This document shows, piece after piece, positions 10,986 through 63,779 of a stretch of DNA of 63,779 nucleotides. This stretch comes from Schmidtea polychroa (lineage: Eukaryota), in NCBI GenBank assembly GCA_044892525.1, contig CM097885.1, positions 73,656,222-73,720,000 of the forward strand, written 5' to 3'. The position numbers and the translations under genes were made by a program. The notes below the pieces were generated by a model that worked only from the letters and a program-made list of their open reading frames with translations, ran no database searches and was not told where the DNA came from. Each line of letters begins with the position of its first letter. The first letter of the stretch is position 1.

Positions 10986-12030
10986 TATCAAGTAATAGCC
11001 ACGCATCGCATGTGGAAGAAAGACAGAATCGTCAATAATATACTAAAAACACCAGTGCCATTCTCCTCAGAAGACACTACATTATATATGGCATAGTAGA
11101 AAAACTATGGGAAGAGGTGATCAAATTGTAAATGATGGCATTCCAGAAAAATCATAATAGCGAAGACATGGGACATTAACTAAGTACGATTGACGAAGGA
11201 GTTGAATGGAGTTGAAGTTCAAAAAGAACATTCGAGGACAAACTGGTGGATAGTTATGATAATATATTTTTTTTGAGAGAAGTGAAAGGAGTCCAGCCAG
11301 CAATAACAACAGTCAAGGTGGAACCTAAAGCAATGAGAATTTTCAATAGTGAGTATTAGAAGCTGCTAAAACATCTTCTAAATTATTTTTTTAAATCCGG
11401 TTCAAAAGTCAACGACATAATTCCAAGTATTTATTTAATGAAATAATGTATAATTTCCAAACAAATTTTTCGCGTTGAATAAAATATTTTCAAAACTATT
11501 TATCAAAATATTTCAATATTTAAAACATATTTATTTAAAAATTTTTCATTAATAAAACTTCTTTTTTAAAAAGCTATTTTAATTTTTAATTAAAAATTTC
11601 AACTTAAAAAATCCAATTTAAAAATTATTTAAAAGTTATTTTAATAGTCAATTATTTACAATTCAAAATTATTTTGATAAAACATTGAAATATTTGACTC
11701 TCAGCTGAAAACACCTCACAGTGAGAAATGTGATTTGGACTCAGATGAAGAATATTTCTCCATATATGAGGAAGAGATGCAGGAGGAGTTCAACAAAGCT
11801 ATGCAAATTGAGGATGGCCTAGGACCAGAATTAGATATCGTGCTAGAGGAGTCGAACTTCGTTCTTGAGAGGAACAAGAGTGTAGCCTCAGAGAAGGATA
11901 TATAATGAGGACATTACCTTGACGGCCCAGGGGGAATGTTGGATGACTGAGAAAGGGCAATTGAAAATTTTGATTTAACAGAGTATGGGCAAACACATAT
12001 CACGTAAATATATATGCTGAAAAGAGGTGA
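10986..12030 (+). pseudogene. Decayed relic of the 3' accessory cassette of an element related to the 50344+ LTR retrotransposon
   Basis: Translates to YQVIATHRMWKKDRIVNNILKTPVPFSSEDTTL, IVEKLWEEVIK, RTFEDKLVDSYDNIFF, CDLDSDEEYFS, AMQIEDGLGPE, NEDITLTAQGGMLDD and VNIYAEKR*, matching ORFs 51909-53222 and 51343-51912 in the same order. Interrupted by an AT-rich stretch at ~11340-11700 and by stops. Confidence 0.9.
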
Positions 12031-46400: not shown

Positions 46401-48823
46401 CCTGCATCTCCGTGCTGTTCCTTTATCTCATCGTTAGCATCCTCATTGCCATCATTGTCGATGGCTGGACGAGTTTCTCGCTTATCAATCCCGAGTAACA
46501 GAACGAGCCGCAATAACTCACCGGCAGTGCACACAGTGACTGGCAACTCGGTCAATGCCAATCCCATTTCTTTGCGACTCTAGAAATAACAAATGAAAAC
46601 TAAAAATATTAAAATCATCTCCCAAACCCTGATCCGACTGTCCTGTAGCAACGGTTTCAGGAGGACACACACGAATTCCGCCAGCATTTCATGGGAGTTG
46701 TCACAATCGTTGATAACCGACTGACAGAGATCACGAGCAGTCAGCACTTTGCTATCATCTGACGCTTCACCGGACGGCATGAGCAGCCGTTTATAGCAGC
46801 GCACGAATTCACACACCGATACCAATCGTGCCCATTGATCCTGGCTCATGCCACCTTCAACAGAGATCGGAGTTCCTTCTGGGACTTGTTCCGCATATTC
46901 CAATTCATTATCTTCTAATTTTGTGTTTTCTTCGCGTCTTTTTTCCCGTAACTGGCGTCGCATTTGATTGCGCCTCTCATTGAGATAGGCCTCTCTTTGA
47001 TCGGCAGTCATGGCGTCCCTGAATAATGCTCAATGTTAGCTAGGATTCAAAAGCACTGATTGATTGTCTACAGCTCCGCCAAATCACAGAAATACCCTAC
47101 CCCCTCCTCCCATCCTATAACAATTCATTCCTACCGCGTATAATCAAGATATATTGGAATATAGTCAGATACCCCCCCTAACTATACAAGAGTTAATACT
47201 ATTAAAATCAATAACATATCCCCCCCCACATTGAAACAAAATCTACAGATACGCCCTCACACAAAACCAATAACCAATCAAATCACTTACAGTCGTTTTT
47301 TCTCCTCGTATTTCTCTTTCCTGTCAGCAATCGGTACCCTAATCAGATCCGGGAACTTGGCAATCTGTTGATTACTGAACAGCTGACCACATTTGAATAT
47401 CAATTGCTTGACGTTTGGATCCGCTGGATTGTCCTTCATTAATTTCAACAATCGTTGAGCCAATGGCGGCAACGAACGCGTTGGACTGGACAGTGGCGAC
47501 CTTATTGCATTACTCGAGCTGGAATTGCGTTGACTAGCATTGCTTTGTGTTGTAGTTGACATCGGAACATCAAACAGTGTTGTTTGTTTTAACTTTTTAT
47601 TTTTAACGAATTTCTCTTTTGATTCATTTATCTGTGATTTTCGCTTGATCAATAAATTGTTCTCCTCATCGTCACTCCGAGTCAAATCGACCGTCGTGTC
47701 TTTGTATTCATCTTTCATTTTATTAAACATTTGGATTTCTGTCGCCTTTGATAACTCTTTCATCTGAATTCACAGAGGAAATTTATATTTTTGTCAAAAA
47801 TTATCTTCCCCACCTTTTGTTTGTCAACAGCGAATTCTGGTTCCAAATTCGGTAATCGATATTTCTTGACAAGTTCTTCGTCAACTACCCATGGATTATT
47901 CTGTTTACCAGAGTGTCTGATTGCGTGGGCACGAATGAACATTCGGATCTGATCTTTCGAAGGAGGCCTCAAGGTTCGCCTGAATATTTATTTTGTCAAA
48001 GAATATTCATAATCCAAATCAATTATTACTCAATAGTTTCTGATGGAATATCTTTCACTAATTTTTCCATTTCAAAAATTTTAACACTGTAAAAATAGTT
48101 CTTCTATACCCGAATAAGATTATATTTGAAAATATGGAAATTGCAAATTACTTTGACAGGAATAATTTTCTTTTTCATATTTTCTTTATCACTACTTGAG
48201 GCATCAGAATTAAGTTTAATTGGAGAATTCTATTTTACAAATTTATTTATAAGTTTTATTATTAATAAATATACTTCTTGATCTTCATTTGATCGAGATC
48301 TATCAACTTTGACTACTACACCTTTAAGACTATAAAAATAAGCCTTAAATATATATATAAAAAGAATGAAATCCTACATCATTTCTTTTGGTGCCGTTAG
48401 CTTAATTGTCACCGGTTCATTTACACAATACTCTTGATGAATTTGAGTCCATGCTTTATGTATAAGTGTATCTAAACTTTCCTTACCTGTATTAATAAGA
48501 TAAATACACGATAAATAAATATATATCAATTTACTGTGATGAACAAATTGTAAAACTGCAGCTTCAAAACATTTCTTAAAGGAGTTTTTTAACATTTTTG
48601 AACAACCTTGTTCGGATTTTAAAGCTTCTTTAAAAGTTAAATTAATTTGTCCAGTAATTCTACAAGTCCATATTTTCTGATTGTATAAAAACGTTTTTCT
48701 ATTAAATTCCTCATCATTTTCACATATTTCGTTAGTAAGGGAATGGCAAATTGTAGCATCCTCGTCCTTTTTGTCTTTTCTAATCTTATTTAAAATGTAG
48801 AGCTTATTGGATAATAATGGCAT
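43491..48823 (-). CDS. BAZ1B: BAZ1-family chromatin remodelling subunit, closest to WSTF (WAC-DDT-WHIM-PHD-PHD-bromodomain)
   Basis: MPLL..KIWTCRITG..LTFKEA..VLQFVHH (WAC); IRMFIRAHA..PWVVDEELVKKY; DDT LVSVCEFVRCY; LGSDRHFRRYW; two PHD fingers; bromodomain SWPFIDPVDPEE / VPDYYQIITDPINL..FFNAEVYN. The motifs match WSTF better than ACF1/BAZ1A. Confidence 0.85.
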
Positions 48824-49894: not shown

Positions 49895-50343
49895 TGTTGA
49901 GGTCTCAGTATTTGAGATTCTCAAGGTTGCACTGGCTACTATATGGGTCTATCGAAATATAAAAACGAAGTCGAATATTTATTGAAATATAAAATATTAC
50001 CAATACAAATTTTCCAAATAAAATGATTCCACTGAAAAATGATGCGTGTTATGTAGGTGTTGTATGTTGTATATGCGTGTTGTGTATGATTGCAGAAGTT
50101 TAGAACGTTTCTGTATATGGATACAGAAACGTTCTAAACTTCTGCAATCATACACAACACGCATATACAATATACAACATACAACTAATAAGGATCTACC
50201 CTTTTTAGTTTGCTAAGAACGGTAAAAATTTTTGGGCGGCCACTACTGATTTTGGGTCACTATTTATATTAATTTTTCTGCGCGCTGGTGTATGGAAAAC
50301 ATATGTTATTATTAAAAATATTATGTTTTATTTGCTTTTTAAA
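49895..50343 (-). mobile_element. Older, diverged LTR fragment of the same family, interrupted by the young element
   Basis: Starts tgttgaggtctc like the young LTR and shares gaacgtttctgt, actaataagga..cctttttagt, ggt.aaa.tttt.gggcg and ctatttatatt blocks in the same order. Confidence 0.8.
50067..50170. repeat. Perfect 50-bp inverted repeat with a 4-nt loop
   Basis: 50067-50116 is the exact reverse complement of 50121-50170; loop atgg; arms extend ~9 nt further with one mismatch. Confidence 0.95.
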
Positions 50344-51446
50344 TGTTGAGGTCTCGATATTCGGGAACACTCAACTTACTGGTTCTTATATATGTACAAA
50401 TATATCAAAAGACAAAGTGATTTATAAAACTTTTATTATAAAGAAAAATTTACCAATATGAATTTGTTGCTAGATTACAAAAATCCAAAAATCCTTCAAA
50501 TATCCAACCGAATATGCTTGTATGTACTGTGTGAATGTTATGTATTCTCTTGCTGTGTTGCGTGTAGGCTTTTGAACGTTTCTGTTTGTCTGTTCGAGTT
50601 TTAGCACTAATAAGGATTAACCTTTTTAGTATGTTAACGCGGTTAAAATTTTGGGGCGAAGAAAATGAATTTTACCTCGCTATTTATATTATTTTTGTAT
50701 ATGAAATTAAATTGATATATTTTTTAAGTATACTTATATTTTAAAGTATTAATTAAAAATTAATCAAAGTGTTGATTATAGAAATTATATATGTTTTAAT
50801 TTTAATTATTAAAATGTCTAAGCATATGTTTTATAATTTTATTTATTTTGTTCAAGTGTTAATTATAGAAATATCTTTAATTTTAATTATTAAAATATCT
50901 AAGCTTATGTTTTATAATTTTATTTATTTTGTTCAAGTGTTAATTATAGAAATATCTAAGCATATGTTTTGTAATATTCTAAGATTAATTATTTTGAAAT
51001 ATCCACTTATATTCTAATGTTAATTACTTATATTCTTATTATTCTAGAAACATATGTTTTATGATTTTCAATATTATTTATTTTGTAATTCTAACTGATA
51101 TTAATTAAGATTATTTAATTAGTCCCCATAATATGTTTTATTTACATGAAATAAATAAGATACAATAATAATTGTCATAATAATAATCCACACACAATAA
51201 TAATAATCCATTCCACAACACAATAATAATTGTCAAAATAATAATTCAAAAATAAATAAGATATACAATAATAATTGTCCAAATCATGAATCAATGTGCA
51301 TAGTTAATAATCAAATGATAATCGTCATTGTTTTGACTTTGGTTATCTGGGTTCTACGTAGATGTTGACCCTGAACTTGTTGCTGCCCGTTCTGTAGTAG
51401 TGTGTTAGTTCAAATTCCTCAATTCTTCTTCCTCTATCATCCAACA
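50344..51446 (-). repeat. 3' LTR (predicted 1103 bp, TGTTG...CAACA)
   Basis: Identical to 62699-63779 through 51424. Inner boundary inferred at 51446 from inverted termini and the adjacent purine run. TATA box tataaata at 50681-50688; AATAAA near 50430 on the minus strand. Confidence 0.8.
50769..50975. repeat. Tandem ~81-87-bp repeats in LTR U3 (also present in the 5' LTR at 63124-63330)
   Basis: Units beginning gtgtt(g/a)attatagaaat at 50769, 50856 and 50937. Confidence 0.8.
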
Positions 51447-51912
51447 CTCCTCCTAGGGCCGATAAAGTAATGTCCTCATTACCTTTATCGCTGAGGACCA
51501 ATTCAATTTCGCAACCGTTTATATACATTGTTGCCCTTTGGAATCCTTTCTTTAACGCTAATTTTAACACATCACCATCAATGATTCGTCTACCGAAGTG
51601 TTGATGTATTTCTTTTTCCGAGATAGTGGATCTTCCATCTTTGATGATGAACATTGGCTCCTCCAACTCGACATTTGGCTCTGGTCCTAGTTCGTCATCT
51701 ATCTGCATTGCTTCGCTCGGTGAGAAATATTCTTCATCTGAGTCTAAATCACATTGTGGGTCAGCATAGTTGTAACTAATTGATGTCTGAGGTTCTTCCT
51801 TTATTTTGATTGCTTGTGGTTTTTTGTCCTCTTTGACGAATATGATGTCATCATCGCTGTCCATTAGTTCATCTTCAAAGGTACGTCTGCTCCCATCTTT
51901 ATTGAATTTCAA
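51343..51912 (-). CDS. Accessory ORF5: acidic protein of unknown function overlapping the PPT and U3
   Basis: 189 codons from TTG; frame open upstream to 51999; first ATG internal (MDSDDD); homologous relic at 11220-12030. Confidence 0.7.
   Translation of the reverse strand: MKFNKDGSRRTFEDELMDSDDDIIFVKEDKKPQAIKIKEEPQTSISYNYADPQCDLDSDEEYFSPSEAMQIDDELGPEPNVELEEPMFIIKDGRSTISEKEIHQHFGRRIIDGDVLKLALKKGFQRATMYINGCEIELVLSDKGNEDITLSALGGVLDDRGRRIEEFELTHYYRTGSNKFRVNIYVEPR
51447..51454 (-). promoter_or_regulatory. Putative polypurine tract
   Basis: AGGAGGAG directly before TGTTGG on the minus strand; the relic copy has AGGGGGAA-TGTTGG at the homologous position (11929-11942). Confidence 0.65.
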
Positions 51913-53222
51913 TTCTCTTTGTGAGGGTTCGATATATATATCTTCCTCAAATTCCTCTGGCTCATCCTGTTTTCTTCTATTGGACTGAGTTGATGGCCAT
52001 TATTTTCCTTTTGGAATGCTGTCATGTCCCACCTTATGACTTCTTCCCATTGCTTTTCGACCAAGAGGTAAATGACTTTTGCGATTAGTGTTGTATCTTC
52101 TGCTGAGAACGGTTCGGGTTTTTTGAGGATGTTGTTGATTGCTTTGTCTTTCTTCCATTTTGGGTGTGTTGCGATTACTTTGTATGCGAGATTCGATAGT
52201 TTGATTCTGTGTGGTGCTACATTTTTGACGAATGAACACATGAACACATCTTCAGCTAATTCTCTGACTCCCATGACATTGTACAGATCTAATGTCAGCG
52301 TCTTGAGTTTCTTTATTATTTCGTATCCCACAATGATTTTTCCGAGTAGCAGCTTCTGTATGTCGATCAGCGCTTGGTATTCGTCTTCATTTCCTCTTAT
52401 TGAATCCCTGTCTGCTCTTGTCTTCTCCGGGTAATAATGTTGGATTTTGGTGCGTGGAGTCACCTTTTTATTGTATACGATTTCTCCTCTAAAATTTCTG
52501 ATGCATATCTCTACTGGTCTGAGATTGTTATTGATGTCGCATACTTCTTTGACATCGACGAACATGATTGCCCTTTGTCGTTCGGGGATTGACAACTGTT
52601 GATGTGTGAATGACATCCGTTTCGAGATGAAATCTTGATGTATTACGATTTCCGACTGTATTATCTCTAATTCCCTGAAAGGATTGGGTATGGTTGGGAC
52701 ATATAGAATTTCGATAGCCATCACACAGGGTAAATTGTTCATTTGGATGACCAAATTGTTGAAATCGTTTGGCATGCTTCGATTCGTCTTCATCGTCTTG
52801 ATCACCACCGTGCAGTTGCTTGTTGTTATAATAGGGATTCGTTGTTGGCAAATTGAAACCTCCGTTCTGGTCATATGGAATAGTATTCTATGTGGGACTT
52901 TTCTTCCTTCATTTGCTGCGATATCTGCATTTTCGAACATATCATAGGTGCCTATTATATCTCTCAGCTTTATCCTTCGGGCTTCATTAAATTTAACTAA
53001 GTGCATTTCTCTTTCTTCGATTTCGCACTTCATTTCATTGGGTATGCAGACCTGGTTAGGGATACTTCTGATGGTGATTGGTGAGCCGTCTGAGGTGATT
53101 TTATTTTGCAAATTTTTGTAGAAACTGTGGTATAGTTTTTGAATGGAGCAGCTGTATTGTTGGACTGGACGTTGTATGGGATTGAATGGTTTGGGATTGA
53201 CTCTGGTATTGTTGGATTGCAT
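51909..53222 (-). CDS. Accessory ORF4: unknown N-terminal domain plus REX4/ISG20-like DEDDh exonuclease fold, probably inactive
   Basis: Likely start MQSNN (ATG 53222, preceded by tttttttag). FVDVKEV..VEICIRNFRGEIVYNKKVTP..IQHY..IQKLLLGKIIVGYEIIKKL..FSAEDTTL..IYLLVEKQWE aligns by eye with REX4/ISG20. Confidence 0.75.
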   Translation of the reverse strand: MQSNNTRVNPKPFNPIQRPVQQYSCSIQKLYHSFYKNLQNKITSDGSPITIRSIPNQVCIPNEMKCEIEEREMHLVKFNEARRIKLRDIIGTYDMFENADIAANEGRKVPHRILFHMTRTEVSICQQRIPIITTSNCTVVIKTMKTNRSMPNDFNNLVIQMNNLPCVMAIEILYVPTIPNPFRELEIIQSEIVIHQDFISKRMSFTHQQLSIPERQRAIMFVDVKEVCDINNNLRPVEICIRNFRGEIVYNKKVTPRTKIQHYYPEKTRADRDSIRGNEDEYQALIDIQKLLLGKIIVGYEIIKKLKTLTLDLYNVMGVRELAEDVFMCSFVKNVAPHRIKLSNLAYKVIATHPKWKKDKAINNILKKPEPFSAEDTTLIAKVIYLLVEKQWEEVIRWDMTAFQKENNGHQLSPIEENRMSQRNLRKIYISNPHKEN

Positions 53223-53367
53223 CTTTCTAAAAAAACAATATAAACATACATATTTACAGCGCATTTGAGGCTTTACCTTATACGCTTCAATATAAATAAA
53301 AATATAAATATATGTGAGTTTAAATATTATCATTGACCAATAGGAATTGAAATTATCTATATTATTT

Positions 53368-54192
53368 TTAAACCAATGAGGACATTGTGTATTGTCCTGG
53401 CCTATACTTATCCAAATGAAAATGCCCTGGTACATTTTTGACCAGTCGGTGCCGATACCGCTGCCTTTTCCATTTGTATTTTTTATACACTTGAACACTG
53501 GTGATAATAGCTAAAATACTCAATGCTAAAATGCTTGATGAAATTACATAGAAAGGCCATCGTGGTTTAGCAGGTTTTACTTGAAATGCTCTTAGTTCAT
53601 CCCAGTTATTTATGATTATGGGTTTTCCCGTAGGTAATTTTATCAGTTTCCTATCAAACTGTCTTAGATTTTTTATTATTAATTTTTTATATACTTGTCT
53701 AGTTACTTTAAATGTCGTTTCTCTGTCTGTGTTTGTTATCGTTTGTAATGACTGTTGGGTGGATGCCGAATTTGTGGTAGTTATTGTTATGGTGGTTGTT
53801 GGCATGCTATTATCTATGGGCTTATATATGTTTGTGATAGTGGTTCTTATTCTTTTGCACCTTACTTGTGATGTGTCAACTAAGGTGTTCCATTGTGCAC
53901 AAAGTGTGTAATTAGTGTTAGGCTGTAGATTTATGAATTCAACATTGTCTCCTCTTTCAAATTCATTAGTTGATCTATTCTCAATTTTTTTCATAAGCTT
54001 GGGTATATCGTCCCCAGTTTCTAGATATAAGTCTCTTATGGGTGATTTATTCAAGTTATATACTTTAATTTTATACGGTGAAATGTTGATTAAAATATCT
54101 TCCTCCATGTATTTTACTGAGTGTATGCTCTCATTTTCTACTTCAGTTGATTTACATAGCCCTATAATTGTTAAAAAGATCGATCGCTGCCA
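53368..54192 (-). CDS. Accessory ORF3: type-I membrane protein (FN3-like domain, Thr-rich stalk, TM, basic tail)
   Basis: NLQPNTNYTLC (FN3 LxPxTxY), PTTTITITTTNSAST, TM WPFYVISSSILALSILAIITSVQVY, then KKYKWKRQR. ATG at 54108, but the frame is open to 54192 with signal-like RSIFLTIIGLCKS. Confidence 0.7.
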   Translation of the reverse strand, partial: WQRSIFLTIIGLCKSTEVENESIHSVKYMEEDILINISPYKIKVYNLNKSPIRDLYLETGDDIPKLMKKIENRSTNEFERGDNVEFINLQPNTNYTLCAQWNTLVDTSQVRCKRIRTTITNIYKPIDNSMPTTTITITTTNSASTQQSLQTITNTDRETTFKVTRQVYKKLIIKNLRQFDRKLIKLPTGKPIIINNWDELRAFQVKPAKPRWPFYVISSSILALSILAIITSVQVYKKYKWKRQRYRHRLVKNVPGHFHLDKYRPGQYTMSSLV

Positions 54193-57100
54193 TCATCAGT
54201 GCTTTTTGTGATCGTAATCCATATTTGTGAGGTGGTTTTTCTATTAACTCTGTTTCTGATAGTTTGCATCTATTAACATGTACTATTATCGGATCCTCAT
54301 TTTTATGTTTTTGTAAATGCAGGTTTTCATGTACTACTTTTACTACTTCGTATGGTCCTTTAAATGGTCTTGCTAATTTAGTTGTTTTGCCTTTACCTAC
54401 CTGTGGAGACATAAGTCTAACCTTATCTCCCACTTTAAAATTATGAGGTTTGCTATTTTTATCATAATCTGCTTTATATTGTTCTTGTCTGAATTTAACT
54501 TTTAAATTTGCAACCTTATATACCTCTTGTAATCTCTCTTGCATTAATGTTACATTATCTGGCGCATCTAAATATTGTGATACTCGAGGCTCAAAAATTG
54601 TATCAATCGGTGTCGCAGGCTCTCTTAAGAACATTAGAAAATATGGTGAATATCCCGTTGTCTCATTTGGTGTGATATTATGGATGTATGTGCATTGATT
54701 AACGTATTCATCCCAATCATTTTGGTTTTTTCCCACAAACACAGCTAATCTACTTAGCAATGTCCCATTGAATCTCTCTACTAAACCATCGGTCTGAGGG
54801 TGGTATGCTGTTGTGTTGATTTTATGCATGTTAAATATGTTAGCTACTCTTTTTATAGTTTCACTCATGAAATTTTTCCCTTTATCTGTTAATAATTTTC
54901 TCGGTGTACCGATTTTAAAGATTATTTTTTCCACAAGTAATTTAGCTACTGTTTCTGCTGTTTCATCTTTTGTAGGAAATGCCTCTGCCCATTTTGTAAA
55001 ATAATCGCTAAAAACTAGTATGTGCTTATTCCCATTAATTGTTGTGGGTAGTTTACACAAAAAATCCATTGCGCACAGTTCCATTGGTGATGTTGTAGCT
55101 GGGATTGGATGTAAAGGTGCTTTAGTTTTTGTTCCTGTATTTTTTCTAGTTGCGCATATTGTGCATGCATTACACCATCTCTTGACATCCTTTTTCAAAT
55201 CGTCCCAATAATATTTTTGCATCAATCTGCTTGCTGTTTTCCTACTTGATAAATGACCTCCTAGAGCACCATCGTGATATTGTAATAGAAGAATTTGTCT
55301 TAATCTTTGTGGTACTACTATTAATTGTTTACCGCTAAAATCCTCAATAACAATTAACTTCTTACAGATTTTATACTTTTGGTTAGTTCCCTTTTTTATT
55401 TCTTCTCTTATCTTGAAGAGTTCTGGATCTTTCATTTGTTCCTCATATATTTCTATTGGTTTTTCAGTTACTAATGCAAAAACTTCTAGTGCTCCTAACT
55501 CTGGAATTCGTGATAATGCATCTGCATTCCTGTTTATTCTACCTGGTTTGTATGCAATCTTTATGTGCATGTCTTGTATTTTCATTGCCCATTTTAACAG
55601 TCTACTGGATGTATCTTTATGTTTCCATAACCCTTCTAATGGCTTATGGTCTGTTCTAATTACTACTTCAGTTCCATATATGTATGGTTTAAATTGTTTT
55701 AATGCAAAAACTATAGCATAACATTCTTTCTCAATTGTTTAGTACCTAATCTGTGCTCCTTTTAATGTTTTGCTTGCATAAGCTATTACATAATCTTTAC
55801 CCTTTTCCTCTTCTTGTCCTAAGACTGCCCCTACGGCCTTCCCACTGGCGTCTGTCATGACAATGAACTGTTTTTTAAAGTCTGGGTATCTTAGTATCGG
55901 TGCTGTTATTAATTTTTCTTTTAGTTGATCAACAGCTTTTTGGTGTTCATCTTTCCATTTCTTTTGTGGCTTGTTAATTTTATCGTTAATCTCTTGTACT
56001 ATTAACACTCCTTTACTCTCTCCCTTTGTTTTGACTCCTTTTGTTAACTCAATTAGTGGTGCTGCTATATTTGCATAATCTTGTATGAATTTACGATAAT
56101 ATCCTGTGAGACCTAAAAATCCCTGTACTTGTTGTAATGTTTTTGGAACTGGGAATTTTTTAACTACTTCAATTTTATCGGGATTAGGTATTATACCATC
56201 TACTGTAACTATATGTCCTAAGAATAATGCTGAAGGTTCTGCCCATTTACACTTAGTGGGTTTTATTTTGATTTTTGCTTTTCTTAATCTTTCTAGTACG
56301 TTAGCTATATCTTTTAGATGTTCCTCAAATGTTTTTGATGAAATTAATATATCATCCATATATACTGCGCAATGTTGTACGTCTACTAATACTGTATTCA
56401 TTAAACGTTGAAATGTTGCTGGCGCATTAGTTAACCCAAAAGGTAATCTTGTATATTCATATAAACCGTCTTCTATCACAAAAGCTGTCTTTTCCGCATC
56501 CCCTTCTTCCATTTGAATTTGCATGTAGCCTTTATTTGCATCTATTACTGTGAAATATTTAGTATCACTAAGTTTATCATATTGTTCTTGTGCTTTTGGG
56601 AATGGGTATGAGTCTTTTACTGTTACATCATTTAATTTACGATAATCAATGCACATTCGAATTTCCCCGTCTTTCTTTCTAACTGGTACGATAGGTGATG
56701 CCCATTGTGAAAAACTTTGTTTTATTACGCCTGCCTCTTTTAATTCTTTAATTTGTCGTTTTATTTCCTCCCTCAGTTTATATGGTACACTATAGGGTCT
56801 CTGTTTTATTGGTCTAGCATTCCCTGTATCGATTACATGTTTGATAATGTCAGTATCTCCTAAATCAAATTCGTGTTTTGCAAAAACATCACTGTATTCG
56901 TCAAGTAATATTTGTAGTTGTAGTTGTTGTGTTTCATTTAGATAATTATTATTTATTTTAATTTTATCATAAAATTTGATATTATTCGCTCTACTCTGTT
57001 CGACCATTCTTTCACTGACATCCTTCGTCATCGACATCTCACATACTTCAAATGTTTGTTCTAATTCACCTTTGAACAACTTTCCCAATTTTGTACCTTT

Positions 57101-60100
57101 ATGAATTTTTACTTTATTTCTTTCGTAATTCGCGATTCTTATTGGAATTATCCCATTATTTGGAATTACACACTCGTCTGTTAACATTACATTATGATTT
57201 CGTGATATTGCCGTTTCAGGCTCAAAAATGAAAGTGTCCTCACTTTTAACATTAACTTTTACTGGAATTATATGATCACTTTGATACTCTAGTTCAAATG
57301 TCTCTAATGCAATTACCTCAGTAAATCTTGCGTCTTGATATATTGCCTTCCGTTTGACTGTACTATCCGTTAAATCGATTACACAGTTTTTTAACTTTTT
57401 GAGTATGTCCATCCCAAGGACACATACGCATTTACATTCTGCTACTACCTTGAAGACATGTTCAACCACTTGATCCGAAAAGTGGACTGTTAATTCGATA
57501 TCTCCTTTTAATGGTATGTAATGTGATGATAATGAAATTACTCTATCTCTTGTGCTCACGATATTTTTCTTTTGGTTTCCGGTTAACTGATCTTCACGAA
57601 TCATAGAAGCTGCTGCTCCTGTGTCACATAATGCCTTTATTATCGTATCATTTATCACTATTTGTAATTTAGGCCTTGCTTCATTTAACCCTTCTAATAT
57701 ATCGTCAAGTTCTAACCCGTAACATCCATAAGTTTTCCTTGGAACACAATGACAATTACCATTTTCACCTGGGATTCTAATTTCAATATTATTTCTTAAT
57801 TCTGTCAATTGTTCTCTTTGATTATCATATAACCCAATATGTGGTTGATCAATATTTTCTGATTTGTTTGCCTCGTCATCTTTCTCGTTGGTGATCATTA
57901 TTTCACCCTCTTCCCTTCGACTTTTCATCCGTTTGATTTCCTTATCGTGCCTCGCAGTGATCAAATATTTGGCTATAAATGGACATAAACATGCTATCAT
58001 TTTATATGAATTACCAAAAACTTGTCTCAGTTGTCTTAACGAAACTAATGATGAGCAAATCATTTTCAATAGTGCTAATGTATAATATATACCCAATATA
58101 GTGGAAAACGTATTTCCGAGAATCGCAAAATATCCCCATATGCTGTATAATACTCTATACACAACTTTCTTGAAGTGCTCTTTTGATAATAATACGTCAA
58201 AGTTGTAATTTCCTCCATAACTATTTTCGATGATTTTGTTTACCATGATAGAAAGAACTTTTTCTTTTTCATGAGGAAATAACATATGTTTTCTGGCGCT
58301 CTCTATCGCCTCTCTCGTATACATCCCATTGTTATCCATTTCGTTGACTTCCTGAAATTCTAACTTTTTCTCAAGTTCAGTTAGTTCTAGTTTTTGTGGT
58401 TTAGTCGCTTCTTTTCTATCTGACATTGTAATCCACATATCATCATTTATTTTGTATAATGGATCTAATAGATTAGTACATTTATCAATTTTTCTCGGAA
58501 CATAGTCTTTATCTGTTAATATCCTTGTTATTGGTTGGAGGTATACAGTTTCTCCTTTATACACTACTGGCAATTCGTTTGTGCACTTATTATTCGTTGC
58601 TAACGATACGCTAACCGGTTTACACTGAAATGTTTGTATTACTTCACCGACAACTCTTGCAAATGTCCCTTTTTCTGCAAATAAAATTGGTGCCATTAAA
58701 TCTGGGTTTGTGACTGCAACCGCCATCTTTGTCCTTAATATTTCTCTATTAAGTTTACAATCGTTTGCGATAGTTGCTTGGTACACCTTGTCCAATTGTA
58801 CTAACTGATGATGATAGAAATAGTCAATTTTATTATTAAAATATGATGCTAGCTTGACGTCGAATTTATCTATTCTCGATTTTGCCTCTTTAATTTCACT
58901 TCCGCTGATATAAATTCCCTCATAATTTGTTTGTACGACTGCCTTGCCGCATTTTATACTTTCACCTTTTCCCACAAATCTCATCGCTTCTGTCTCAGAA
59001 TCTGACATGTATATTGTTGGGGTATCTCTCTCTTGAATTATCGTAGCTCGTCGCTTTTGATCTTTGATGTTCTTGGATTCTACATCCGTAAACTGTTTAC
59101 CTCGTATCGTTCTGAATTTCAGTGTCTTTAGTTTAGTTAGATGGCATTCGTATTTATTCACTCTGTATATGATCATTGACTCGCCTGTATCACAGCTTGT
59201 CTCATCTAATGTGCAGAACTTATGTGTCATCATTTTCTTTGATGCACTATCAAATGACGCTTTGAATTTCCTTAATTCAATGTAATACTGCCGTCTCACT
59301 ACAATATTGTCTGCCACATGCCCCCATATTTTATACCTTCCTCCTTCACAATATCCTCCTGTTGATGACCATCCCACGACATTTACTAATTGTCTTACTC
59401 GTGCTCCTACTTGAGCATCTAACTCAAATCCATCCGGCGTTTTTATCTTTTTTGTTTTAAATGCATTTTCGCATTCAACTGGCGTTATTATTATTGCTTC
59501 TGGTGCCCATGTTGGAGTTAATATTGTTCTCGCTATTTTATTACATACAAAACTTTCCTCTGAATATTTAACGATACATTCTCCTGCCTCAGTGTGAATG
59601 AAATCAGATTCCTGATATATATGGAAAATCTTGGGATCTGCTACAATTAATTTTGTTGGATTAGCCTCTGGGCAATTTTCTACATCTAGCAATGAATATT
59701 TTTGTCCCCACTTGGGATTCTGACAATCATACGCTATGATCGCATTATTCCCTTTTATCAGATCTAATAACAATGTTATTACTATAATTACTATTGACAT
59801 TGTCGACTTTCTTTCTTTTTGACTTGGTTTCATAGTTGTTTTATTTACTAGATTTTTTACTGTTTCCTCCGTATCATCTATTTCTACGTTAATATTATCT
59901 TCTACGCTTTTTTGAGCACTTTCGATTAGACTCTCATCATACAGTATTTTCCATCCTCCCTTTAATTTTATCCATGGCATAGCATCTATCTTTAGTTTAT
60001 TATATATCATTTTAGCGATATTTTCTATTTGATTCTTTGGATTCAATCGCAAAAGTTTCTTGTATCTTGCTATTAAATATGCCATTGCCGTAATCACTTT

Positions 60101-60334
60101 ATCTCGATTAACTCCTGTTGTAAATAATATCTTTAACACTGTCTCTTCATTTGCTTCCTCTGCACTCAATTCTCTAATCTCTTTTTCCATTAATTTAATC
60201 TTTTTAACTATATTTTCTATTAACGCTGATGGTTTTGCTTCCGGAAATCGTCTCATATTCATTGCTTTAACTAACTCTGTTATCATTTTTATATCCTTGT
60301 CATTATCCTGATTTTTTGGGACTTCCTGTCTCAT
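54152..60334 (-). CDS. env-pol: Env-Pol polyprotein: helical leader, signal peptide, chuvirus-like fusion protein, TM, protease, RT, RNase H, integrase (one in-frame TAA at 55739-55741)
   Basis: Signal peptide 59800-59750; AYDC 59734-59723; TM ~58140-58050; protease LCDTGA ~57626; RT SQWASPIVPVRKKDG..RMCIDYR, LPFGL, YMDD 56362-56351; RNase H TDASG..YASKTL..Y*TIEKEC..TDHKPL; integrase HHCC, MDF/TDKG/ERFN, GPY motif. Confidence 0.93.
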
Positions 60335-60374
60335 ATTATTTGCAATATCTCTTAAACGCTCTGCTGCCTTTCTG

Positions 60375-62453
60375 TCATCTGACTTTTCGAGGCCTTCCTC
60401 TACTTCGTCTCATCGTCTCTGCGTCCTGCATATTTGCTTGTTTCGCAATTTTTTCTATTGTCTCATGTAAATTATCATATTTAGTCTCAATAGGTTTAAA
60501 GATTTCATCGCTAACTGTTGGTGACCTCATTGCTCCTCCTGAAGAAGCATCCCATAATCTAAATAATTTGTCATAGTCATTTTCGTCGTTTATACCCAAT
60601 TCTACTGATGGAATTGATGCATCCATTTCATTATTTTCTTGCCTTTCTATTACGGCAGTAATAATATTATTATCGATAACGTTTACCCCGTAGTCGATTA
60701 TATATTCGTTATTCATCATTTCTACACCGTTAAAATACAGTTTTACTTTATCATTATCTCCCAATTTCTCGGGCCAATTAGCTCTGGCCATCTGTTTCAC
60801 TTTATTCACTTTTGTGCAAACATGTACCCCTGTACTACGCATAAGTATTCTTGAAAGGTCTTTTGCCTCAATAGTTATATTCAATGACTCATGTAATTTC
60901 TGATTTTTTCTCACAAACTCACCATAACATTTTATCATTTCTTTCAATTCTATTTCTAGTTCAAATACTCTTGTCATATTTTGTCTCTTTACCATTATTG
61001 GTATCAAATTTCTCAAATATTCTAAGTCAATTCCTTCGACTTGAACTCTATTTATTATACGCAATGTCTCATTATCATCATAAGGCCATTTCTCTAATGT
61101 CTCTTTCAATTCCTCTTTTAATTCTTTACATCTATTTGCTTCTGCAAGAAATATCTCATCCGCTTCTCTTGCTTCACGAAACTCATCATTATCTATATCT
61201 ACATCATTAGTAAAACACTGAAACTCATTTAATGACATTTCTAACTTTCTCTCAATAAGTCTCCCATATTGAGTTTTAAATTCTTTTAATTCCTCTCTCA
61301 AACTGTTTATTTCATCATTAGCTGATATCAACTCAGCACTATTAATCTGTTTTATCTCAGGCTCATTTTTAAATCTCACTCTATTAGGCGATTCGCTTCG
61401 CGCATTATTACATACTTTAGCTAAGTGACCATATTTTTGGCAATTATAACATTTGATTTGTCCATTAAAATTTACTTTATCTCTACCATCATTATTATAA
61501 GGGCTTCCTCCCCTTTCTCTATATGAATTCTGTCTATATGGACTTGTCTGTCTACGTCTCAAATCATTTGTATTATCTCCATTATCATATCTATTACTTC
61601 TATCATATTTATTATTTCTCAAATTATTTCTACTAAAATCGACTCGATTATCTCTCGTATAATTAGTTCTATTGTATTCATATCGATTATCTCTATCAAA
61701 AGTGTTTCTATTGTTTCTATTCTCAAAGTTTCTGTTTCTCGCATTATCAAACCTCCTCCTGTTTTCAGGCGATTGACTTCTATCAGGACTCGGGCTTACC
61801 CTTCGTCTATTTTTTACAAAGTTTAAATATAGTTGTTTCATCTCCTCCCAGGGGATGTTGTCATCTGACTTACCCAACTCAGATTTTACCTCTATGGGTT
61901 TTTGGATTTCCATTGCATCTACATGTGAACTAAATCTATCTCGTTGTATTGCTTCTATACGCTTAGCTTTATGAACTAATTCATTTAAATTACCATATTC
62001 TACCATAATTAGCGCTTTATATAAATATTTTTGTATACCATTCCAAAACTGATCCTCAATTAATTTTGCTGTGTGCTCACCTGCACCAAATGCCTTTTTC
62101 GCTAACTCCGTAATTGTATATACATATTCACCAACTGATTCTCTAGTACCTTGATATCTGTTTCTAAATTTTTGAACATTTATCTTTTGTAAATCGCTAT
62201 CGATTACTATTTCTGCCCTCAGATATCTTACGAGTTGATCAAAATTATTTCCTTTACACTCTAAGTTATTGTATGCCTGTAACGCATAACCTTTTAAATA
62301 TAATGGGATTCTCATTTTTAACTCATCAGGTGTCCAACCACAAGCTTCTGCATACTGAGCGATCTCAGTGAAAAAATCGTCGAACTTTTCAGGCTCTCCT
62401 CTATATGGTTCTACTGGTAAAATTTTTATGTAATTATTATTATTATTATTCAT
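60375..62453 (-). CDS. gag: Gag (capsid, R/N/D/S-rich region, CCHC zinc knuckle, coiled coil, ubiquitin-like domain), 692 aa
   Basis: LKMRIPLYLKGYALQAY..RYQGTRESVGEY (retrotransposon capsid); CYNCQKYGHLAKVC; long C-terminal extension. Confidence 0.92.
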   Translation of the reverse strand: MNNNNNNYIKILPVEPYRGEPEKFDDFFTEIAQYAEACGWTPDELKMRIPLYLKGYALQAYNNLECKGNNFDQLVRYLRAEIVIDSDLQKINVQKFRNRYQGTRESVGEYVYTITELAKKAFGAGEHTAKLIEDQFWNGIQKYLYKALIMVEYGNLNELVHKAKRIEAIQRDRFSSHVDAMEIQKPIEVKSELGKSDDNIPWEEMKQLYLNFVKNRRRVSPSPDRSQSPENRRRFDNARNRNFENRNNRNTFDRDNRYEYNRTNYTRDNRVDFSRNNLRNNKYDRSNRYDNGDNTNDLRRRQTSPYRQNSYRERGGSPYNNDGRDKVNFNGQIKCYNCQKYGHLAKVCNNARSESPNRVRFKNEPEIKQINSAELISANDEINSLREELKEFKTQYGRLIERKLEMSLNEFQCFTNDVDIDNDEFREAREADEIFLAEANRCKELKEELKETLEKWPYDDNETLRIINRVQVEGIDLEYLRNLIPIMVKRQNMTRVFELEIELKEMIKCYGEFVRKNQKLHESLNITIEAKDLSRILMRSTGVHVCTKVNKVKQMARANWPEKLGDNDKVKLYFNGVEMMNNEYIIDYGVNVIDNNIITAVIERQENNEMDASIPSVELGINDENDYDKLFRLWDASSGGAMRSPTVSDEIFKPIETKYDNLHETIEKIAKQANMQDAETMRRSRGRPRKVR

Positions 62454-62678
62454 CCTATAGACTATTCTATTTCTGAGATTATAAACTATTTCGGATTGAT
62501 TATCTATTTTATCTTTTTTTTGAATTATTTAATAATTTTCAAAACTGAATTTATTTATTTAAAAATTGGTCAATGATATTGTTTTTTTATAAATATATTT
62601 TCCCAATATAAAATACTATACCCTCTGATCTCAATTCCTATCCCCCCAAATTGTGAATAACAATAATTGATTTTAAAG

Positions 62679-62696
62679 TCCCGGTTCGCGGCACCA
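62679..62696 (-). promoter_or_regulatory. Primer-binding site (tRNA-Phe- or tRNA-His-like)
   Basis: TGGTGCCGCGAACCGGGA, 2 nt inside the 5' LTR end CA. Confidence 0.85.
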
Positions 62697-62698
62697 AA

Positions 62699-63779
62699 TG
62701 TTGAGGTCTCGATATTCGGGAACACTCAACTTACTGGTTCTTATATATGTACAAATATATCAAAAGACAAAGTGATTTATAAAACTTTTATTATAAAGAA
62801 AAATTTACCAATATGAATTTGTTGCTAGATTACAAAAATCCAAAAATCCTTCAAATATCCAACCGAATATGCTTGTATGTACTGTGTGAATGTTATGTAT
62901 TCTCTTGCTGTGTTGCGTGTAGGCTTTTGAACGTTTCTGTTTGTCTGTTCGAGTTTTAGCACTAATAAGGATTAACCTTTTTAGTATGTTAACGCGGTTA
63001 AAATTTTGGGGCGAAGAAAATGAATTTTACCTCGCTATTTATATTATTTTTGTATATGAAATTAAATTGATATATTTTTTAAGTATACTTATATTTTAAA
63101 GTATTAATTAAAAATTAATCAAAGTGTTGATTATAGAAATTATATATGTTTTAATTTTAATTATTAAAATGTCTAAGCATATGTTTTATAATTTTATTTA
63201 TTTTGTTCAAGTGTTAATTATAGAAATATCTTTAATTTTAATTATTAAAATATCTAAGCTTATGTTTTATAATTTTATTTATTTTGTTCAAGTGTTAATT
63301 ATAGAAATATCTAAGCATATGTTTTGTAATATTCTAAGATTAATTATTTTGAAATATCCACTTATATTCTAATGTTAATTACTTATATTCTTATTATTCT
63401 AGAAACATATGTTTTATGATTTTCAATATTATTTATTTTGTAATTCTAACTGATATTAATTAAGATTATTTAATTAGTCCCCATAATATGTTTTATTTAC
63501 ATGAAATAAATAAGATACAATAATAATTGTCATAATAATAATCCACACACAATAATAATAATCCATTCCACAACACAATAATAATTGTCAAAATAATAAT
63601 TCAAAAATAAATAAGATATACAATAATAATTGTCCAAATCATGAATCAATGTGCATAGTTAATAATCAAATGATAATCGTCATTGTTTTGACTTTGGTTA
63701 TCTGGGTTCTACGTAGATGTTGACCCTGAACTTGTTGCTGCCCGTTCTGTAGTAGTGTGTTAGTTCAAATTCCTCAATT
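62699..63779 (-). repeat. 5' LTR (truncated by the window; predicted to end near 63801)
   Basis: Matches 50344-51424 with no differences noticed. Confidence 0.95.

What the first reader, a model, noticed from the sequence alone, without database searches (positions are those of the whole stretch)
50344..63779. Complex virus-like Ty3/Gypsy element: gag(UBL), env-pol fusion and three accessory genes
Layout on the minus strand: LTR, PBS, gag with ubiquitin-like domain, leader/signal/class III-like fusogen/TM/PR/RT/RH/IN, FN3-TM protein, DEDDh-like protein, acidic ORF, PPT, LTR; about 13.4 kb with apparently identical LTRs. RT-RH-IN order and the GPY motif mark it as Gypsy. Known env-bearing LTR elements (errantiviruses, chuvirus-G-bearing BEL/Pao 'Anakin', nematode elements) generally place env after pol and have few accessory genes. 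I do not recognise this combination; it may be an undescribed lineage of enveloped invertebrate retrovirus-like elements.
Basis: partly seen in the sequence, partly recalled or inferred. Interest (0 to 1): 0.95.

Follow-up and report, generated by a model that had tools for sequence, protein, structure and literature searches.

The report
Enveloped gypsy-type endogenous retrovirus, extra genes
A very young, almost intact 13.4 kb retrovirus-like element of an unidentified AT-rich animal carries a fusion glycoprotein taken from negative-strand RNA viruses between gag and pol; that layout is already published, but its conserved extra modules (Bcl-2-like, ubiquitin-like, inactive-looking exonuclease, second membrane protein) seem not to be.

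Summary
Two 1084-base repeats are 100% identical. On the minus strand they bracket a PBS-like site, gag, a glycoprotein-PR-RT-RH-IN frame, downstream ORFs and a purine tract.

It is a Ty3/Gypsy element. Its envelope is a class III fusion glycoprotein (Pfam PF24664, E 6.6e-90) lying upstream of the protease.

Ten distinct relatives from metagenomes and a mislabelled bacterial MAG have the glycoprotein; all seven that also reach pol show gag-G-PR-pol. So it is neither a chimera nor a misassembly.

What I found described nowhere, yet conserved across these relatives:
- A Bcl-2-like domain just before the glycoprotein's signal segment.
- A ubiquitin-like domain at the end of Gag.
- A cupin plus ISG20-like DEDDh gene after pol. 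The window copy keeps one of five catalytic residues.
- A membrane module after integrase.

"FN3" could not be verified. The "acidic ORF" is the tail of the exonuclease-like gene.

This copy has one in-frame stop in pol, and one frame change in the last gene relative to two relatives. The host was not identified.

The parts
62699..63776 (-). 5' LTR. The identical stretch is 62696-63779 and runs to the window end. It contains about 2.7 copies of an 81-bp tandem repeat.
   Evidence: 1084/1084 identity with the other copy. Ends in CA at 62700-62699. The start is inferred from the TG beside the purine tract of the other copy.
62679..62696 (-). PBS-like site. It begins with TGG, 2 nt after the LTR.
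   Evidence: Sequence read. The cognate tRNA was not identified; there is no tRNA gene in the window.
60375..62453 (-). gag, 692 aa. N-terminal capsid-like part, one CCHC knuckle (aa 333-348), coiled/acidic middle, ubiquitin-like domain (about aa 530-600).
   Evidence: Pfam zf-CCHC. tblastn to the gag of relatives. A 4-sequence profile of the C-terminal part hits the ubiquilin-2 UBL at E 5e-4, then ISG15 and UHRF1 UBLs. The same region of L007 hits Pfam ubiquitin at E 0.0046.
54152..60334 (-). ORF2/pol, given as one part. One frame from the ATG to the end of integrase, holding leader, glycoprotein, PR, RT, RNase H and IN. Broken once by an in-frame stop. It lies in the +1 frame relative to gag, with an 11-codon overlap.
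59951..60217 (-). Bcl-2-like domain (ORF2 aa 40-128) in the cytosolic leader.
   Evidence: Pfam PF00452: E 2.5e-6, 28.4 bits, below the curated cutoff of 31.4. It is the best Pfam family for 4 of 5 homologous leaders. The leader profile against PDB improves from E about 2 to 4e-5 as members are added, and the top 60 hits are always Bcl-2 or Bcl-xL.
59732..59812 (-). Hydrophobic segment (ORF2 aa 175-201). It is the signal or signal-anchor of the glycoprotein. By position it would also be the tail anchor of the Bcl-2-like domain.
   Evidence: Hydropathy. Conserved in position in L009, L010 and L011, followed by the conserved start of the ectodomain.
57848..59731 (-). Class III fusion glycoprotein: ectodomain, TM (about aa 745-790) and the start of the tail.
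   Evidence: Pfam PF24664 Monjiviricetes_fusion, E 6.6e-90. It is 24-38% identical to the G of six relatives, with ten invariant cysteines.
57389..57682 (-). Retropepsin (DTG at aa 904).
   Evidence: Pfam RVP, E 3.4e-7; motif.
56207..56683 (-). Reverse transcriptase (YMDD).
   Evidence: Pfam RVT_1, E 1.9e-35; motif.
55316..55957 (-). Gypsy-type RNase H. This domain holds the in-frame stop.
   Evidence: Pfam RT_RNaseH_2 and RT_RNaseH; reading of the frame.
54152..55315 (-). Integrase: HHCC finger, DDE core, GPY module.
   Evidence: Pfam Integrase_H2C2 (E 2.3e-18) and rve (E 9.1e-10). HHCC and GPY motifs.
53368..54108 (-). acc1, 246 aa. About 183-aa N-terminal part with 4 N-x-S/T sites, one TM (aa 184-208), basic 38-aa tail. 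No own signal peptide. +1 frame relative to IN, with a 13-codon overlap of the open frames.
   Evidence: No homologue was found in the related loci held. It is the positional counterpart of the two-TM module at the C-end of the polyproteins of relatives, one of which has an Ig_3 match.
51343..53222 (-). acc2-acc3, given as one part. Cupin-like domain, ISG20-like DEDDh domain and an acidic C-terminal region. It is read in two frames in this copy, which is one frame change relative to relatives P0153 and P0154. The end of the gene overlaps the PPT and enters the 3' LTR.
   Evidence: 64 homologues. Profile against PDB: ISG20L2 at 5e-30, ISG20 at 1.7e-20. AF2 pLDDT 83.5; Foldseek ISG20 at TM 0.80; N-terminal domain cupin/DSBH-like. 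P0153 and P0154 span both pieces. Catalytic columns.
51423..51435 (-). Polypurine tract.
   Evidence: Sequence read.
50344..51421 (-). 3' LTR. The identical stretch is 50341-51424.

Best explanation
What it is. This is a recently integrated endogenous retrovirus-like element of the Ty3/Gypsy (Metaviridae) kind, about 13.4 kb long. It belongs to the 'gag-env-pol' type, in which a class III fusion glycoprotein of the kind used by chu-, nyami- and borna-like negative-strand RNA viruses sits between gag and the protease.

Shown.
- The identical LTRs, and the gene order and domains listed above.
- Relatives as distant as 43-55% RT identity keep the same order and the same extra modules: Gag UBL, Bcl-2-like leader, post-integrase membrane module, and cupin plus DEDDh gene.

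Inferred mechanism.
1. A full-length LTR-to-LTR RNA is translated into Gag. ORF2 is then reached either by a +1 shift or by independent initiation.
2. The internal hydrophobic segment inserts the chain into the ER. The Bcl-2-like leader and, after the stop-transfer TM, PR-RT-RH-IN stay in the cytosol. The glycoprotein ectodomain faces the lumen.
3. Signal peptidase and the element's protease would then release a tail-anchored Bcl-2-like protein, the membrane glycoprotein, and the enzymes.
4. Capsids assembled from Gag would bud through glycoprotein-bearing membrane and enter a neighbouring cell, for example the germline, by low-pH class III fusion.
5. The Bcl-2-like domain most likely keeps the producing cell alive or modulates mitochondrial or ER stress signalling.
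6. The Gag UBL most likely recruits ubiquitin-binding sorting or proteasome factors.
7. The cupin plus DEDDh protein has lost its catalytic residues in this sublineage. It most likely acts as an RNA- or DNA-end-binding factor rather than a nuclease.

State of this copy. One in-frame stop in RNase H makes it probably non-autonomous. Given the identical LTRs, the stop probably arose in the last replication cycle or is an assembly error.
For: LTR identity and termini.

Domains: PF24664 at E 6.6e-90; RVP, RVT_1, RT_RNaseH_2, Integrase_H2C2, rve; DTG, YMDD, HHCC, GPY.

Same order in relatives:
- L001, L002, L003.
- L004-6, with a 4026-aa polyprotein followed by two acc2-like ORFs.
- L007, and L008 with a single 2693-aa gag-G-PR-RT-RH-IN ORF.
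- L010 and L011, the nearest RT relatives.

Module census.
Bcl-2-like domain.
UBL.
DEDDh plus cupin.
Post-IN membrane module.

Integration in a host chromosome next to a BAZ1A/ACF1-like gene.
A second, degraded copy of the last gene at about 10980-11995.
Against: - No expression, protein or particle data exist, so every step of the life cycle is inferred.
- The outer end of the 5' LTR and the target-site duplication lie beyond the window.
- The Pfam Bcl-2 score is below the curated cutoff. The only structure model of the leader was unusable (pLDDT 36). One leader homologue (L009) lacks the part aligned to the second conserved Bcl-2 motif.
- acc1 has no signal peptide and no detectable homologue, so it may be a decayed remnant.
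- NJ trees of the RT did not robustly join the window element to the other glycoprotein-bearing elements.
- The pol frame holds a stop.
- No relative was found in IMG/VR.
Confidence: 0.8

Rival explanations
1. One-off chimera or misassembly. An ordinary Gypsy element was joined by assembly error or nested insertion to an endogenous RNA-virus glycoprotein and to unrelated host ORFs.
For: The element ends exactly at the window end, which may be a contig end at a repeat. There is an assembly gap 582 bases to its left.
Against: The glycoprotein is in the same reading frame as PR-RT. Seven distinct relatives that hold both the glycoprotein and pol have it in the same place. Five have the cupin-DEDDh gene right after pol. 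The LTRs are identical.
Confidence: 0.02
2. It is simply a member of the published gag-env-pol groups (nematode ERVs of Sacco 2022, or the 'ancient errantiviruses' of Chary & Hayashi), and the extra modules are present there too but were not annotated. Nothing would then be new except annotation.
For: Both papers describe env upstream of pol. From my own memory of the abstract of Sacco 2022, those elements have a continuous gag-env-pro-pol ORF, an env related to Nyamiviridae and Chuviridae, and additional ORFs. Relatives L008 and L004 have such continuous ORFs.
Against: Chary & Hayashi do not mention ubiquitin, Bcl-2 or exonuclease. The additional ORFs I recall for the nematode elements (a small hypothetical protein or a Upf1-like helicase) differ from those here.
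Confidence: 0.35
3. The 'Bcl-2-like' leader is a chance or convergent helical similarity. The leader would be only a spacer or membrane-proximal matrix-like region of the polyprotein.
For: All Pfam scores are below the curated cutoff of 31.4 bits. Only the BH1-BH2 part aligns. The AF2 single-sequence model failed. L009 lacks the second motif.
Against: Four of five leaders that are 20-26% identical to the window's leader each give Bcl-2 as the best Pfam family: E 2.5e-6, 9.3e-5, 1.8e-4 and 0.035. The profile E-value against PDB falls steadily to 4e-5 as members are added, with only Bcl-2 or Bcl-xL among the top 60. A hydrophobic segment follows the domain where Bcl-2 proteins have their tail anchor (the tail anchor is established knowledge of the family).
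Confidence: 0.25
4. The ORFs downstream of integrase are decaying passengers in this copy with no role. acc1 would be a remnant of the polyprotein's C-terminal module, and acc2/acc3 a dead exonuclease gene.
For: acc1 lacks a signal peptide and homologues. acc2 keeps one of five catalytic residues. acc2 and acc3 are in different frames here but form one protein in P0153 and P0154.
Against: The ORFs are long and open in an element with identical LTRs. The loss of catalytic residues is shared with P0153 and P0154, which are 58-65% identical, so it was inherited and kept rather than being recent decay. The fold is predicted with high confidence. The gene is kept after pol in five divergent elements.
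Confidence: 0.2

Closest known systems
Nematode endogenous retroviruses with env upstream of pol (Sacco et al. 2022, J Gen Virol, doi 10.1099/jgv.0.001739). Known to me through its citation in PMC13524379 and my memory of the abstract; the paper could not be read here.
   Same: Metavirus-type pol. A glycoprotein captured from a negative-strand RNA virus and placed between gag and the protease, in one frame with pol. Extra ORFs downstream of pol. Young copies with similar LTRs.
   Different: The window element has gag, ORF2 and the downstream genes in separate frames rather than one continuous ORF. The accessory genes recalled for the nematode elements (a small protein, a Upf1-like helicase) are not the ones here. 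The host here is unidentified. No nematode protein appeared among the listed hits to the neighbouring BAZ1A-like gene or among the 120 best RT hits listed.
GAG-ENV-POL 'ancient errantiviruses' of Bryozoa, Platyhelminthes and Nematoda (Chary & Hayashi, eLife 2026, PMC13524379).
   Same: Ty3/gypsy pol, class III (HSV gB-type) ENV, gag-env-pol order, multiple nearly identical copies.
   Different: That study annotates only GAG, ENV and POL. It does not mention a Bcl-2-like, ubiquitin-like or exonuclease module. Whether the window element falls in one of its clades was not tested, because the sequences are not held here.
Anakin (BEL/Pao with chuvirus glycoprotein, Dezordi et al. 2020, PMC7642597) and the chuvirus-like glycoprotein genes found next to gypsy POL in arthropods (PMC13524379).
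   Same: The same glycoprotein family, captured by an LTR retroelement.
   Different: Anakin has a BEL/Pao pol. No Bcl-2-like leader or cupin-DEDDh gene is reported for either group in what I read.
Bdelloid rotifer Vesta and Juno elements with a DEDDy exonuclease ORF3 (Rodriguez et al. 2017, PMC5408684).
   Same: A Gypsy-type LTR element with a DnaQ-like exonuclease-fold gene, and sometimes small TM ORFs, downstream of pol.
   Different: Those are RNase D-like DEDDy with catalytic residues largely kept. Here it is ISG20/REXO-like DEDDh, preceded by a cupin-like domain, with four of five catalytic residues lost in the window sublineage. The rotifer elements with DEDDy lack a bona fide env.
Viral Bcl-2 homologues of large DNA viruses (herpes-, pox-, asfar- and adenoviruses; established knowledge).
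   Same: A virus-encoded Bcl-2-like domain followed by a membrane anchor.
   Different: Here it is encoded by a reverse-transcribing element, as the N-terminal part of the glycoprotein-pol polyprotein. No function has been tested.

Membership tests
Ty3/Gypsy (Metaviridae) | Domain order PR-RT-RH-IN, with Gypsy-type RT and RNase H. | tested here: met
   Pfam RVP, RVT_1, RT_RNaseH_2, RT_RNaseH, Integrase_H2C2 and rve, in that order. 5923 Gypsy-type pol proteins hit at E <= 0.001.
Ty3/Gypsy (Metaviridae) | Integrase with HHCC, DDE core and GPY/F module. | tested here: met
Ty3/Gypsy (Metaviridae) | LTRs with TG...CA ends, a PBS after the 5' LTR and a PPT before the 3' LTR. | tested here: met
   CA end, TGG-initiated PBS-like site, and a 13-nt purine run next to a TG. 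The outer boundary of the 5' LTR lies at the window end.
Ty3/Gypsy (Metaviridae) | Target-site duplication of 4-6 bp. | not testable with these tools
   Only one flank is inside the window.
gag-env-pol metaviruses (nematode ERVs; GAG-ENV-POL 'ancient errantiviruses') | env placed between gag and the protease. | tested here: met
gag-env-pol metaviruses (nematode ERVs; GAG-ENV-POL 'ancient errantiviruses') | env is a class III fusogen related to those of Monjiviricetes. | tested here: met
   PF24664 at E 6.6e-90, with a weak BDV_G match. No solved structure matches by sequence.
gag-env-pol metaviruses (nematode ERVs; GAG-ENV-POL 'ancient errantiviruses') | One continuous gag-env-pro-pol ORF (feature of the nematode elements, as I recall the abstract). 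| tested here: not met
   gag and ORF2 are in different frames, with an 11-codon overlap. Relatives L008 and L004 do have one ORF.
gag-env-pol metaviruses (nematode ERVs; GAG-ENV-POL 'ancient errantiviruses') | RT or IN groups inside the published clades; host is a nematode, bryozoan or flatworm. | not tested
   The published sequences are not held. The host was not identified.
Insect errantiviruses | gag-pol-env order with a baculovirus F-type env. | tested here: not met
   env is upstream of pol and is of class III type.
Bcl-2 family | Sequence match to the Bcl-2 family profile (BH1-BH2 region). | tested here: inconclusive
   E 2.5e-6, but 28.4 bits against the curated cutoff of 31.4. It is the best family for 4 of 5 leaders. 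The 5-sequence profile against PDB gives E 4e-5, with only Bcl-2 or Bcl-xL on top.
Bcl-2 family | Helical-bundle fold with a hydrophobic groove. | tested here: inconclusive
   The AF2 single-sequence model has pLDDT 36 and is all-helical but unusable.
Bcl-2 family | C-terminal membrane anchor. | tested here: met
   Hydrophobic segment at aa 175-201, about 45 residues after the domain. It is at the same time the glycoprotein's signal segment.
DEDDh exonucleases (ISG20/REXO, Pfam RNase_T) | RNase T-type fold and family-level sequence similarity. | tested here: met
   Profile against PDB: ISG20L2 at 5e-30. 19 of 30 family members hit PF00929. Foldseek ISG20 at E 2e-8, TM 0.80.
DEDDh exonucleases (ISG20/REXO, Pfam RNase_T) | The five catalytic residues D-E-D-D-h. 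| tested here: not met
   The window protein and its two close relatives keep one of five. Each of the five residues is kept by 19-26 of the 30 aligned members.
Ubiquitin-like (beta-grasp) domains | Profile similarity to UBL domains. | tested here: met
   The 4-sequence profile hits the ubiquilin-2 UBL at 5e-4, with ISG15, UHRF1 and SUMO next. Pfam gives only weak hits: 0.05 in the window, 0.0046 in L007.
Ubiquitin-like (beta-grasp) domains | C-terminal di-glycine of conjugatable modifiers. | tested here: not met
   No GG at the end of the aligned domain in any of the four sequences.
Fibronectin type III | FN3 profile match or beta-sandwich model for acc1. | tested here: inconclusive
   No Pfam family even at E <= 10. 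One relative has an Ig_3 match in the equivalent position (E 9e-5).

The most novel reading that the evidence does not exclude
The window element represents a deep, conserved lineage of 'complex' enveloped Gypsy-type retroviruses of invertebrates. Besides a captured class III glycoprotein, these carry their own Bcl-2-like regulator, made as the cytosolic head of the glycoprotein precursor and anchored by the glycoprotein's signal segment. They also carry a ubiquitin-like Gag tail, a second membrane protein, and a cupin-plus-pseudo-exonuclease. This would be the first Bcl-2 homologue known from a reverse-transcribing element, and a set of accessory genes that evolved independently of those of vertebrate complex retroviruses.
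Probability: 0.5. Interest if true: 0.8.

Novelty: new variant of a known kind. Interest (0 to 1): 0.62.

Why it matters
Env-bearing LTR elements are the best models for how retrotransposons become infectious. The gag-env-pol type shows that an RNA-virus fusogen can be built into the polyprotein itself.

This element and its relatives add something further. Several extra modules are kept across elements that share only about half of their RT residues, which points to a long-lived virus-like life style rather than chance captures.

A Bcl-2-like domain in a reverse-transcribing element would be a new case of convergent evolution with large DNA viruses in handling host cell death. The catalytically stripped ISG20-like domain is a relative of an interferon-induced antiviral nuclease, and may hint at mimicry of, or interference with, a host RNA-decay defence.

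All of this can be tested with descriptive data on expression, structure and distribution.

Tried and rejected
- Host identification failed. Exact look-ups of five window proteins found nothing. The neighbouring BAZ1A-like exon has only one unnamed 47%-identical relative, and named hits at 25-30% over the longer alignments. There was no tRNA or Rfam match in the window.
- IMG/VR scans with the leader alignment, the glycoprotein and a glycoprotein alignment found no relatives. The GTDB genome scan also found none.
- phmmer of single proteins against PDB gave nothing useful for gag, the leader plus glycoprotein, or acc2. Profiles were needed.
- The AF2 model of the leader from a single sequence was unusable. 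I did not try another route.
- acc1 and acc3 have no detectable counterpart in the related loci by tblastn or phmmer. acc1 against the post-integrase extensions gave only insignificant matches.
- The two +1 overlaps (gag/ORF2 and IN/acc1) share no common motif.
- The N-terminal domain of acc2 lacks a conserved HxD...H triad, so I rejected an active 2OG oxygenase.
- NJ bootstraps of the RT did not resolve whether the window element is inside the clade of the other glycoprotein-bearing elements.
- P0153 and P0154 could not be placed on contigs.
- The Sacco 2022 paper is not held.

Full report
**1. Observation**

Direct repeats. The stretches 50341-51424 and 62696-63779 are identical at all 1084 positions, at an offset of 12355.
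- Read on the minus strand, the 5' copy ends in CA at 62700-62699.
- Two T's follow, then a TGG-initiated PBS-like site.
- The 3' copy is preceded by a 13-nt purine run at 51423-51435, next to a TG at 51421-51420.
- The right LTR reaches the last bases of the window. Its outer boundary and the target-site duplication cannot be checked.
- Each LTR holds about 2.7 copies of an 81-bp tandem repeat.

Minus-strand ORFs.
- gag, 692 aa.
- A long frame from 60334 to 54152.
- A 246-aa ORF (acc1).
- A DEDDh-like ORF (acc2, probable ATG at 53222).
- An acidic ORF (acc3) that runs over the purine tract into the LTR.

**2. Core genes**

Pfam on the long frame gives:
- Monjiviricetes_fusion (PF24664), E 6.6e-90.
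- RVP, then RVT_1 (E 1.9e-35).
- RT_RNaseH_2 and RT_RNaseH.
- Integrase_H2C2 and rve in the continuation of the same frame.

The DTG, YMDD, HHCC and GPY motifs are present. A hydrophobic segment at aa 175-201 precedes the glycoprotein ectodomain and a TM follows it.

Breaks in this copy:
- The long frame is interrupted by one in-frame stop inside the RNase H domain. That is the only break in pol.
- The last gene shows one frame change relative to two relatives (section 4d).

Frames:
- ORF2 is in the +1 frame relative to gag, with an 11-codon overlap of open frames.
- acc1 is likewise +1 relative to IN, with a 13-codon overlap.
- The two overlaps share no motif.

**3. Not a one-off**

Protein searches, contig look-ups and one metagenome scan gave ten distinct related elements.
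- L001, L002, L009, L010 and L011 come from one ENA assembly.
- L003 is a contig of a MAG labelled Flavobacteriaceae.
- L004-6 are 16-17.5 kb contigs that are 99.8% identical across three ENA assemblies.
- L007 and L008 come from JGI metagenomes.
- P0219 is a JGI protein.
- Sources.

Shared layout:
- The glycoprotein is 24-38% identical to the window's.
- The RT is 43-55% identical.
- In every relative that holds both, the glycoprotein lies between gag and the protease.
- L008 is a single 2693-aa gag-G-PR-RT-RH-IN ORF. L004 has a 4026-aa polyprotein.
- The seven closest RT sequences by identity all come from elements of this type, or from proteins resembling them.
- A quick NJ analysis did not give a robust clade.

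**4. Extra modules, tested by profiles built from the window and these relatives**

(a) Leader (ORF2 aa 1-175).
- Pfam Bcl-2 (PF00452) is the best family. E is 2.5e-6 over 84 of the 100 profile positions, at 28.4 bits. That is under the curated 31.4.
- Homologous leaders exist in L007, L009, L010 and L011.
- Three of those four also give Bcl-2 as their best Pfam family: E 0.035, 9.3e-5 and 1.8e-4.
- Against PDB sequences the best E-value falls as members are added: about 2 for one sequence, 3.6e-3 for two, 1.8e-4 for three, 4e-5 for five.
- For the three multi-sequence profiles, the 60 best matches shown are all Bcl-2 or Bcl-xL, aligned over the BH1-BH2 part.
- The hydrophobic segment that follows is conserved in position. 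It is directly followed by the conserved start of the ectodomain.
- I read this as true remote homology, with probability about 0.75. No structure supports it yet.

(b) Gag C-terminal domain.
- It is conserved in L001, L002, L003, L007, L010 and L011.
- The 4-sequence profile hits UBL domains almost exclusively: ubiquilin-2 at 5e-4, then ISG15 and UHRF1.
- There is no terminal di-glycine.

(c) acc2.
- It has 64 homologues.
- The 30-sequence profile hits ISG20L2 at 5e-30, ISG20 at 1.7e-20 and SDN1.
- 19 of 30 members reach Pfam RNase_T.
- The AF2 model has pLDDT 83.5. Foldseek gives ISG20 at E 2e-8 and TM 0.80 for the C-terminal domain.
- For the N-terminal domain Foldseek gives cupin or double-stranded beta-helix proteins. 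It has no conserved metal triad.
- Each of the five DEDDh residues is kept by 19-26 of the 30 aligned members. The window protein and its two close relatives keep one of five.
- The gene sits directly after pol in L002, L004-6 (two paralogues), L010 and L011.

(d) acc3.
- Two UniParc proteins are 58-65% identical to acc2 and cover acc2's C-terminal half and acc3 as one chain.
- acc3 is therefore the tail of the same gene. In the window it is read in another frame.

(e) acc1.
- No homologue was found.
- The polyproteins of L002, L003, L004, L008 and P0219 continue 330-700 aa beyond the integrase GPY/F module.
- Those extensions have two hydrophobic segments, the last close to the C-end. P0219 has an Ig_3 match between them.
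- acc1 has one TM, a basic tail, four N-x-S/T sites and no signal peptide. It is the positional counterpart.
- 'FN3' remains unverified.

**5. Surroundings**

- The element lies about 1.5 kb from the WAC-domain exon of a BAZ1A/ACF1-like gene, which occupies 43750-48823 on the minus strand.
- The window also holds a PMCA exon, an intact pogo-type transposase ORF, a fragment of another Gypsy RT, and a degraded copy of the acc2-acc3 region at about 10980-11995.
- The host is a metazoan with about 30% G+C. I could not name it.

**6. Comparison with the literature**

- Chary & Hayashi (PMC13524379) describe Ty3/gypsy elements with class III ENV in the order GAG-ENV-POL in Nematoda, Bryozoa and Platyhelminthes.
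- They also report chuvirus-like glycoprotein genes next to gypsy POL in arthropods.
- They cite Sacco et al. 2022 for nematode ERVs with ENV and POL flipped. That paper's title attributes the env to capture of an RNA virus glycoprotein gene. It is not held, so what I say of its abstract is from memory.
- Rodriguez et al. 2017 (PMC5408684) describe DEDDy exonuclease and small TM ORF3s in rotifer Gypsy elements.
- Dezordi et al. 2023 (PMC10084718) found no clear Gypsy capture of a chuvirus glycoprotein.
- None of the texts I could search mentions a Bcl-2-like, ubiquitin-like or ISG20-like module in such elements.
- The layout is therefore known. The module set is, as far as I can tell, not.

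**7. Verdict**

This is a real, very young, nearly intact gag-env-pol Gypsy-type endogenous retrovirus. I rate it a new variant of a known kind. The most interesting part is the conserved Bcl-2-like head of the glycoprotein precursor.

- Entry 3 lists the residues at the catalytic columns of acc2 and the overlap of acc2 and acc3.
- The output lists those residues too. Searches show the ORF bounds as the tools print them.
- I have not repeated these details here and have deleted nothing.
- The alignment tool printed consensus lines by itself.

Noticed in passing
window 10980-11995 (+): Degraded, multiply interrupted copy of the last gene (C-terminal part of acc2 plus acc3) of a related element. 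It is 34-71% identical at protein level over the matched stretches and lies downstream of a PMCA exon. It shows that this gene family has been in the genome for some time.
   Followed up: partly
window 30432-31901 (+): Intact 489-aa pogo/Tigger-type transposase ORF (CENP-B_N, HTH_Tnp_Tc5, DDE_1).
   Followed up: no
window 26572-27565 (-): Fragment of an unrelated Gypsy RT-RNase H, 27-29% identical to the element's.
   Followed up: no
window 43750-48823 (-): Host BAZ1A/ACF1-like gene (WAC, WSD, PHD). Its only close relative in 5.8 billion proteins is one unnamed 47%-identical Logan protein, so the host lineage is poorly sampled.
   Followed up: partly
window 57848-59731 (-): The glycoprotein ectodomain has no N-x-S/T sequon between aa 200 and 780. 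acc1 has four in its first 66 residues.
   Followed up: no
L001, L010, L011, P0072; L004:6319-8433: Relatives carry two or three retropepsin copies and ankyrin repeats between the glycoprotein and RT. L004 has a further retropepsin after the integrase.
   Followed up: no
L004, L005, L006: Contigs that are 99.8% identical over the 11.8 kb compared (16-17.5 kb long, among the largest of their assemblies) recur in at least three ENA assemblies. Each starts a few hundred bases before a 4026-aa ORF. This is compatible with full-length transcripts or episomal copies, but the sample type is unknown.
   Followed up: no
L003 (GCA_003506685.1, DNYW01000170.1): A 9-kb contig of a MAG labelled Flavobacteriaceae is a eukaryotic retroelement of this lineage. 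It is a contaminant contig in a bacterial bin.
   Followed up: no
P0153 (UniParc UPI00061083E2): A gene model that joins an acc2-acc3 fragment to a biotin carboxylase N-terminal domain. It is probably a prediction artefact merging the element with a host gene.
   Followed up: no
window 50795-51014 and 63150-63369: About 2.7 tandem copies of an 81-bp unit inside each LTR, possibly repeated enhancer-like sequence in U3.
   Followed up: no
P0079: A 2524-aa Gypsy polyprotein with a chromodomain and a Rhabdo_glycop (PF00974) match, on a 977-kb ENA contig. This may be another, separate capture of a rhabdovirus-type G.
   Followed up: no
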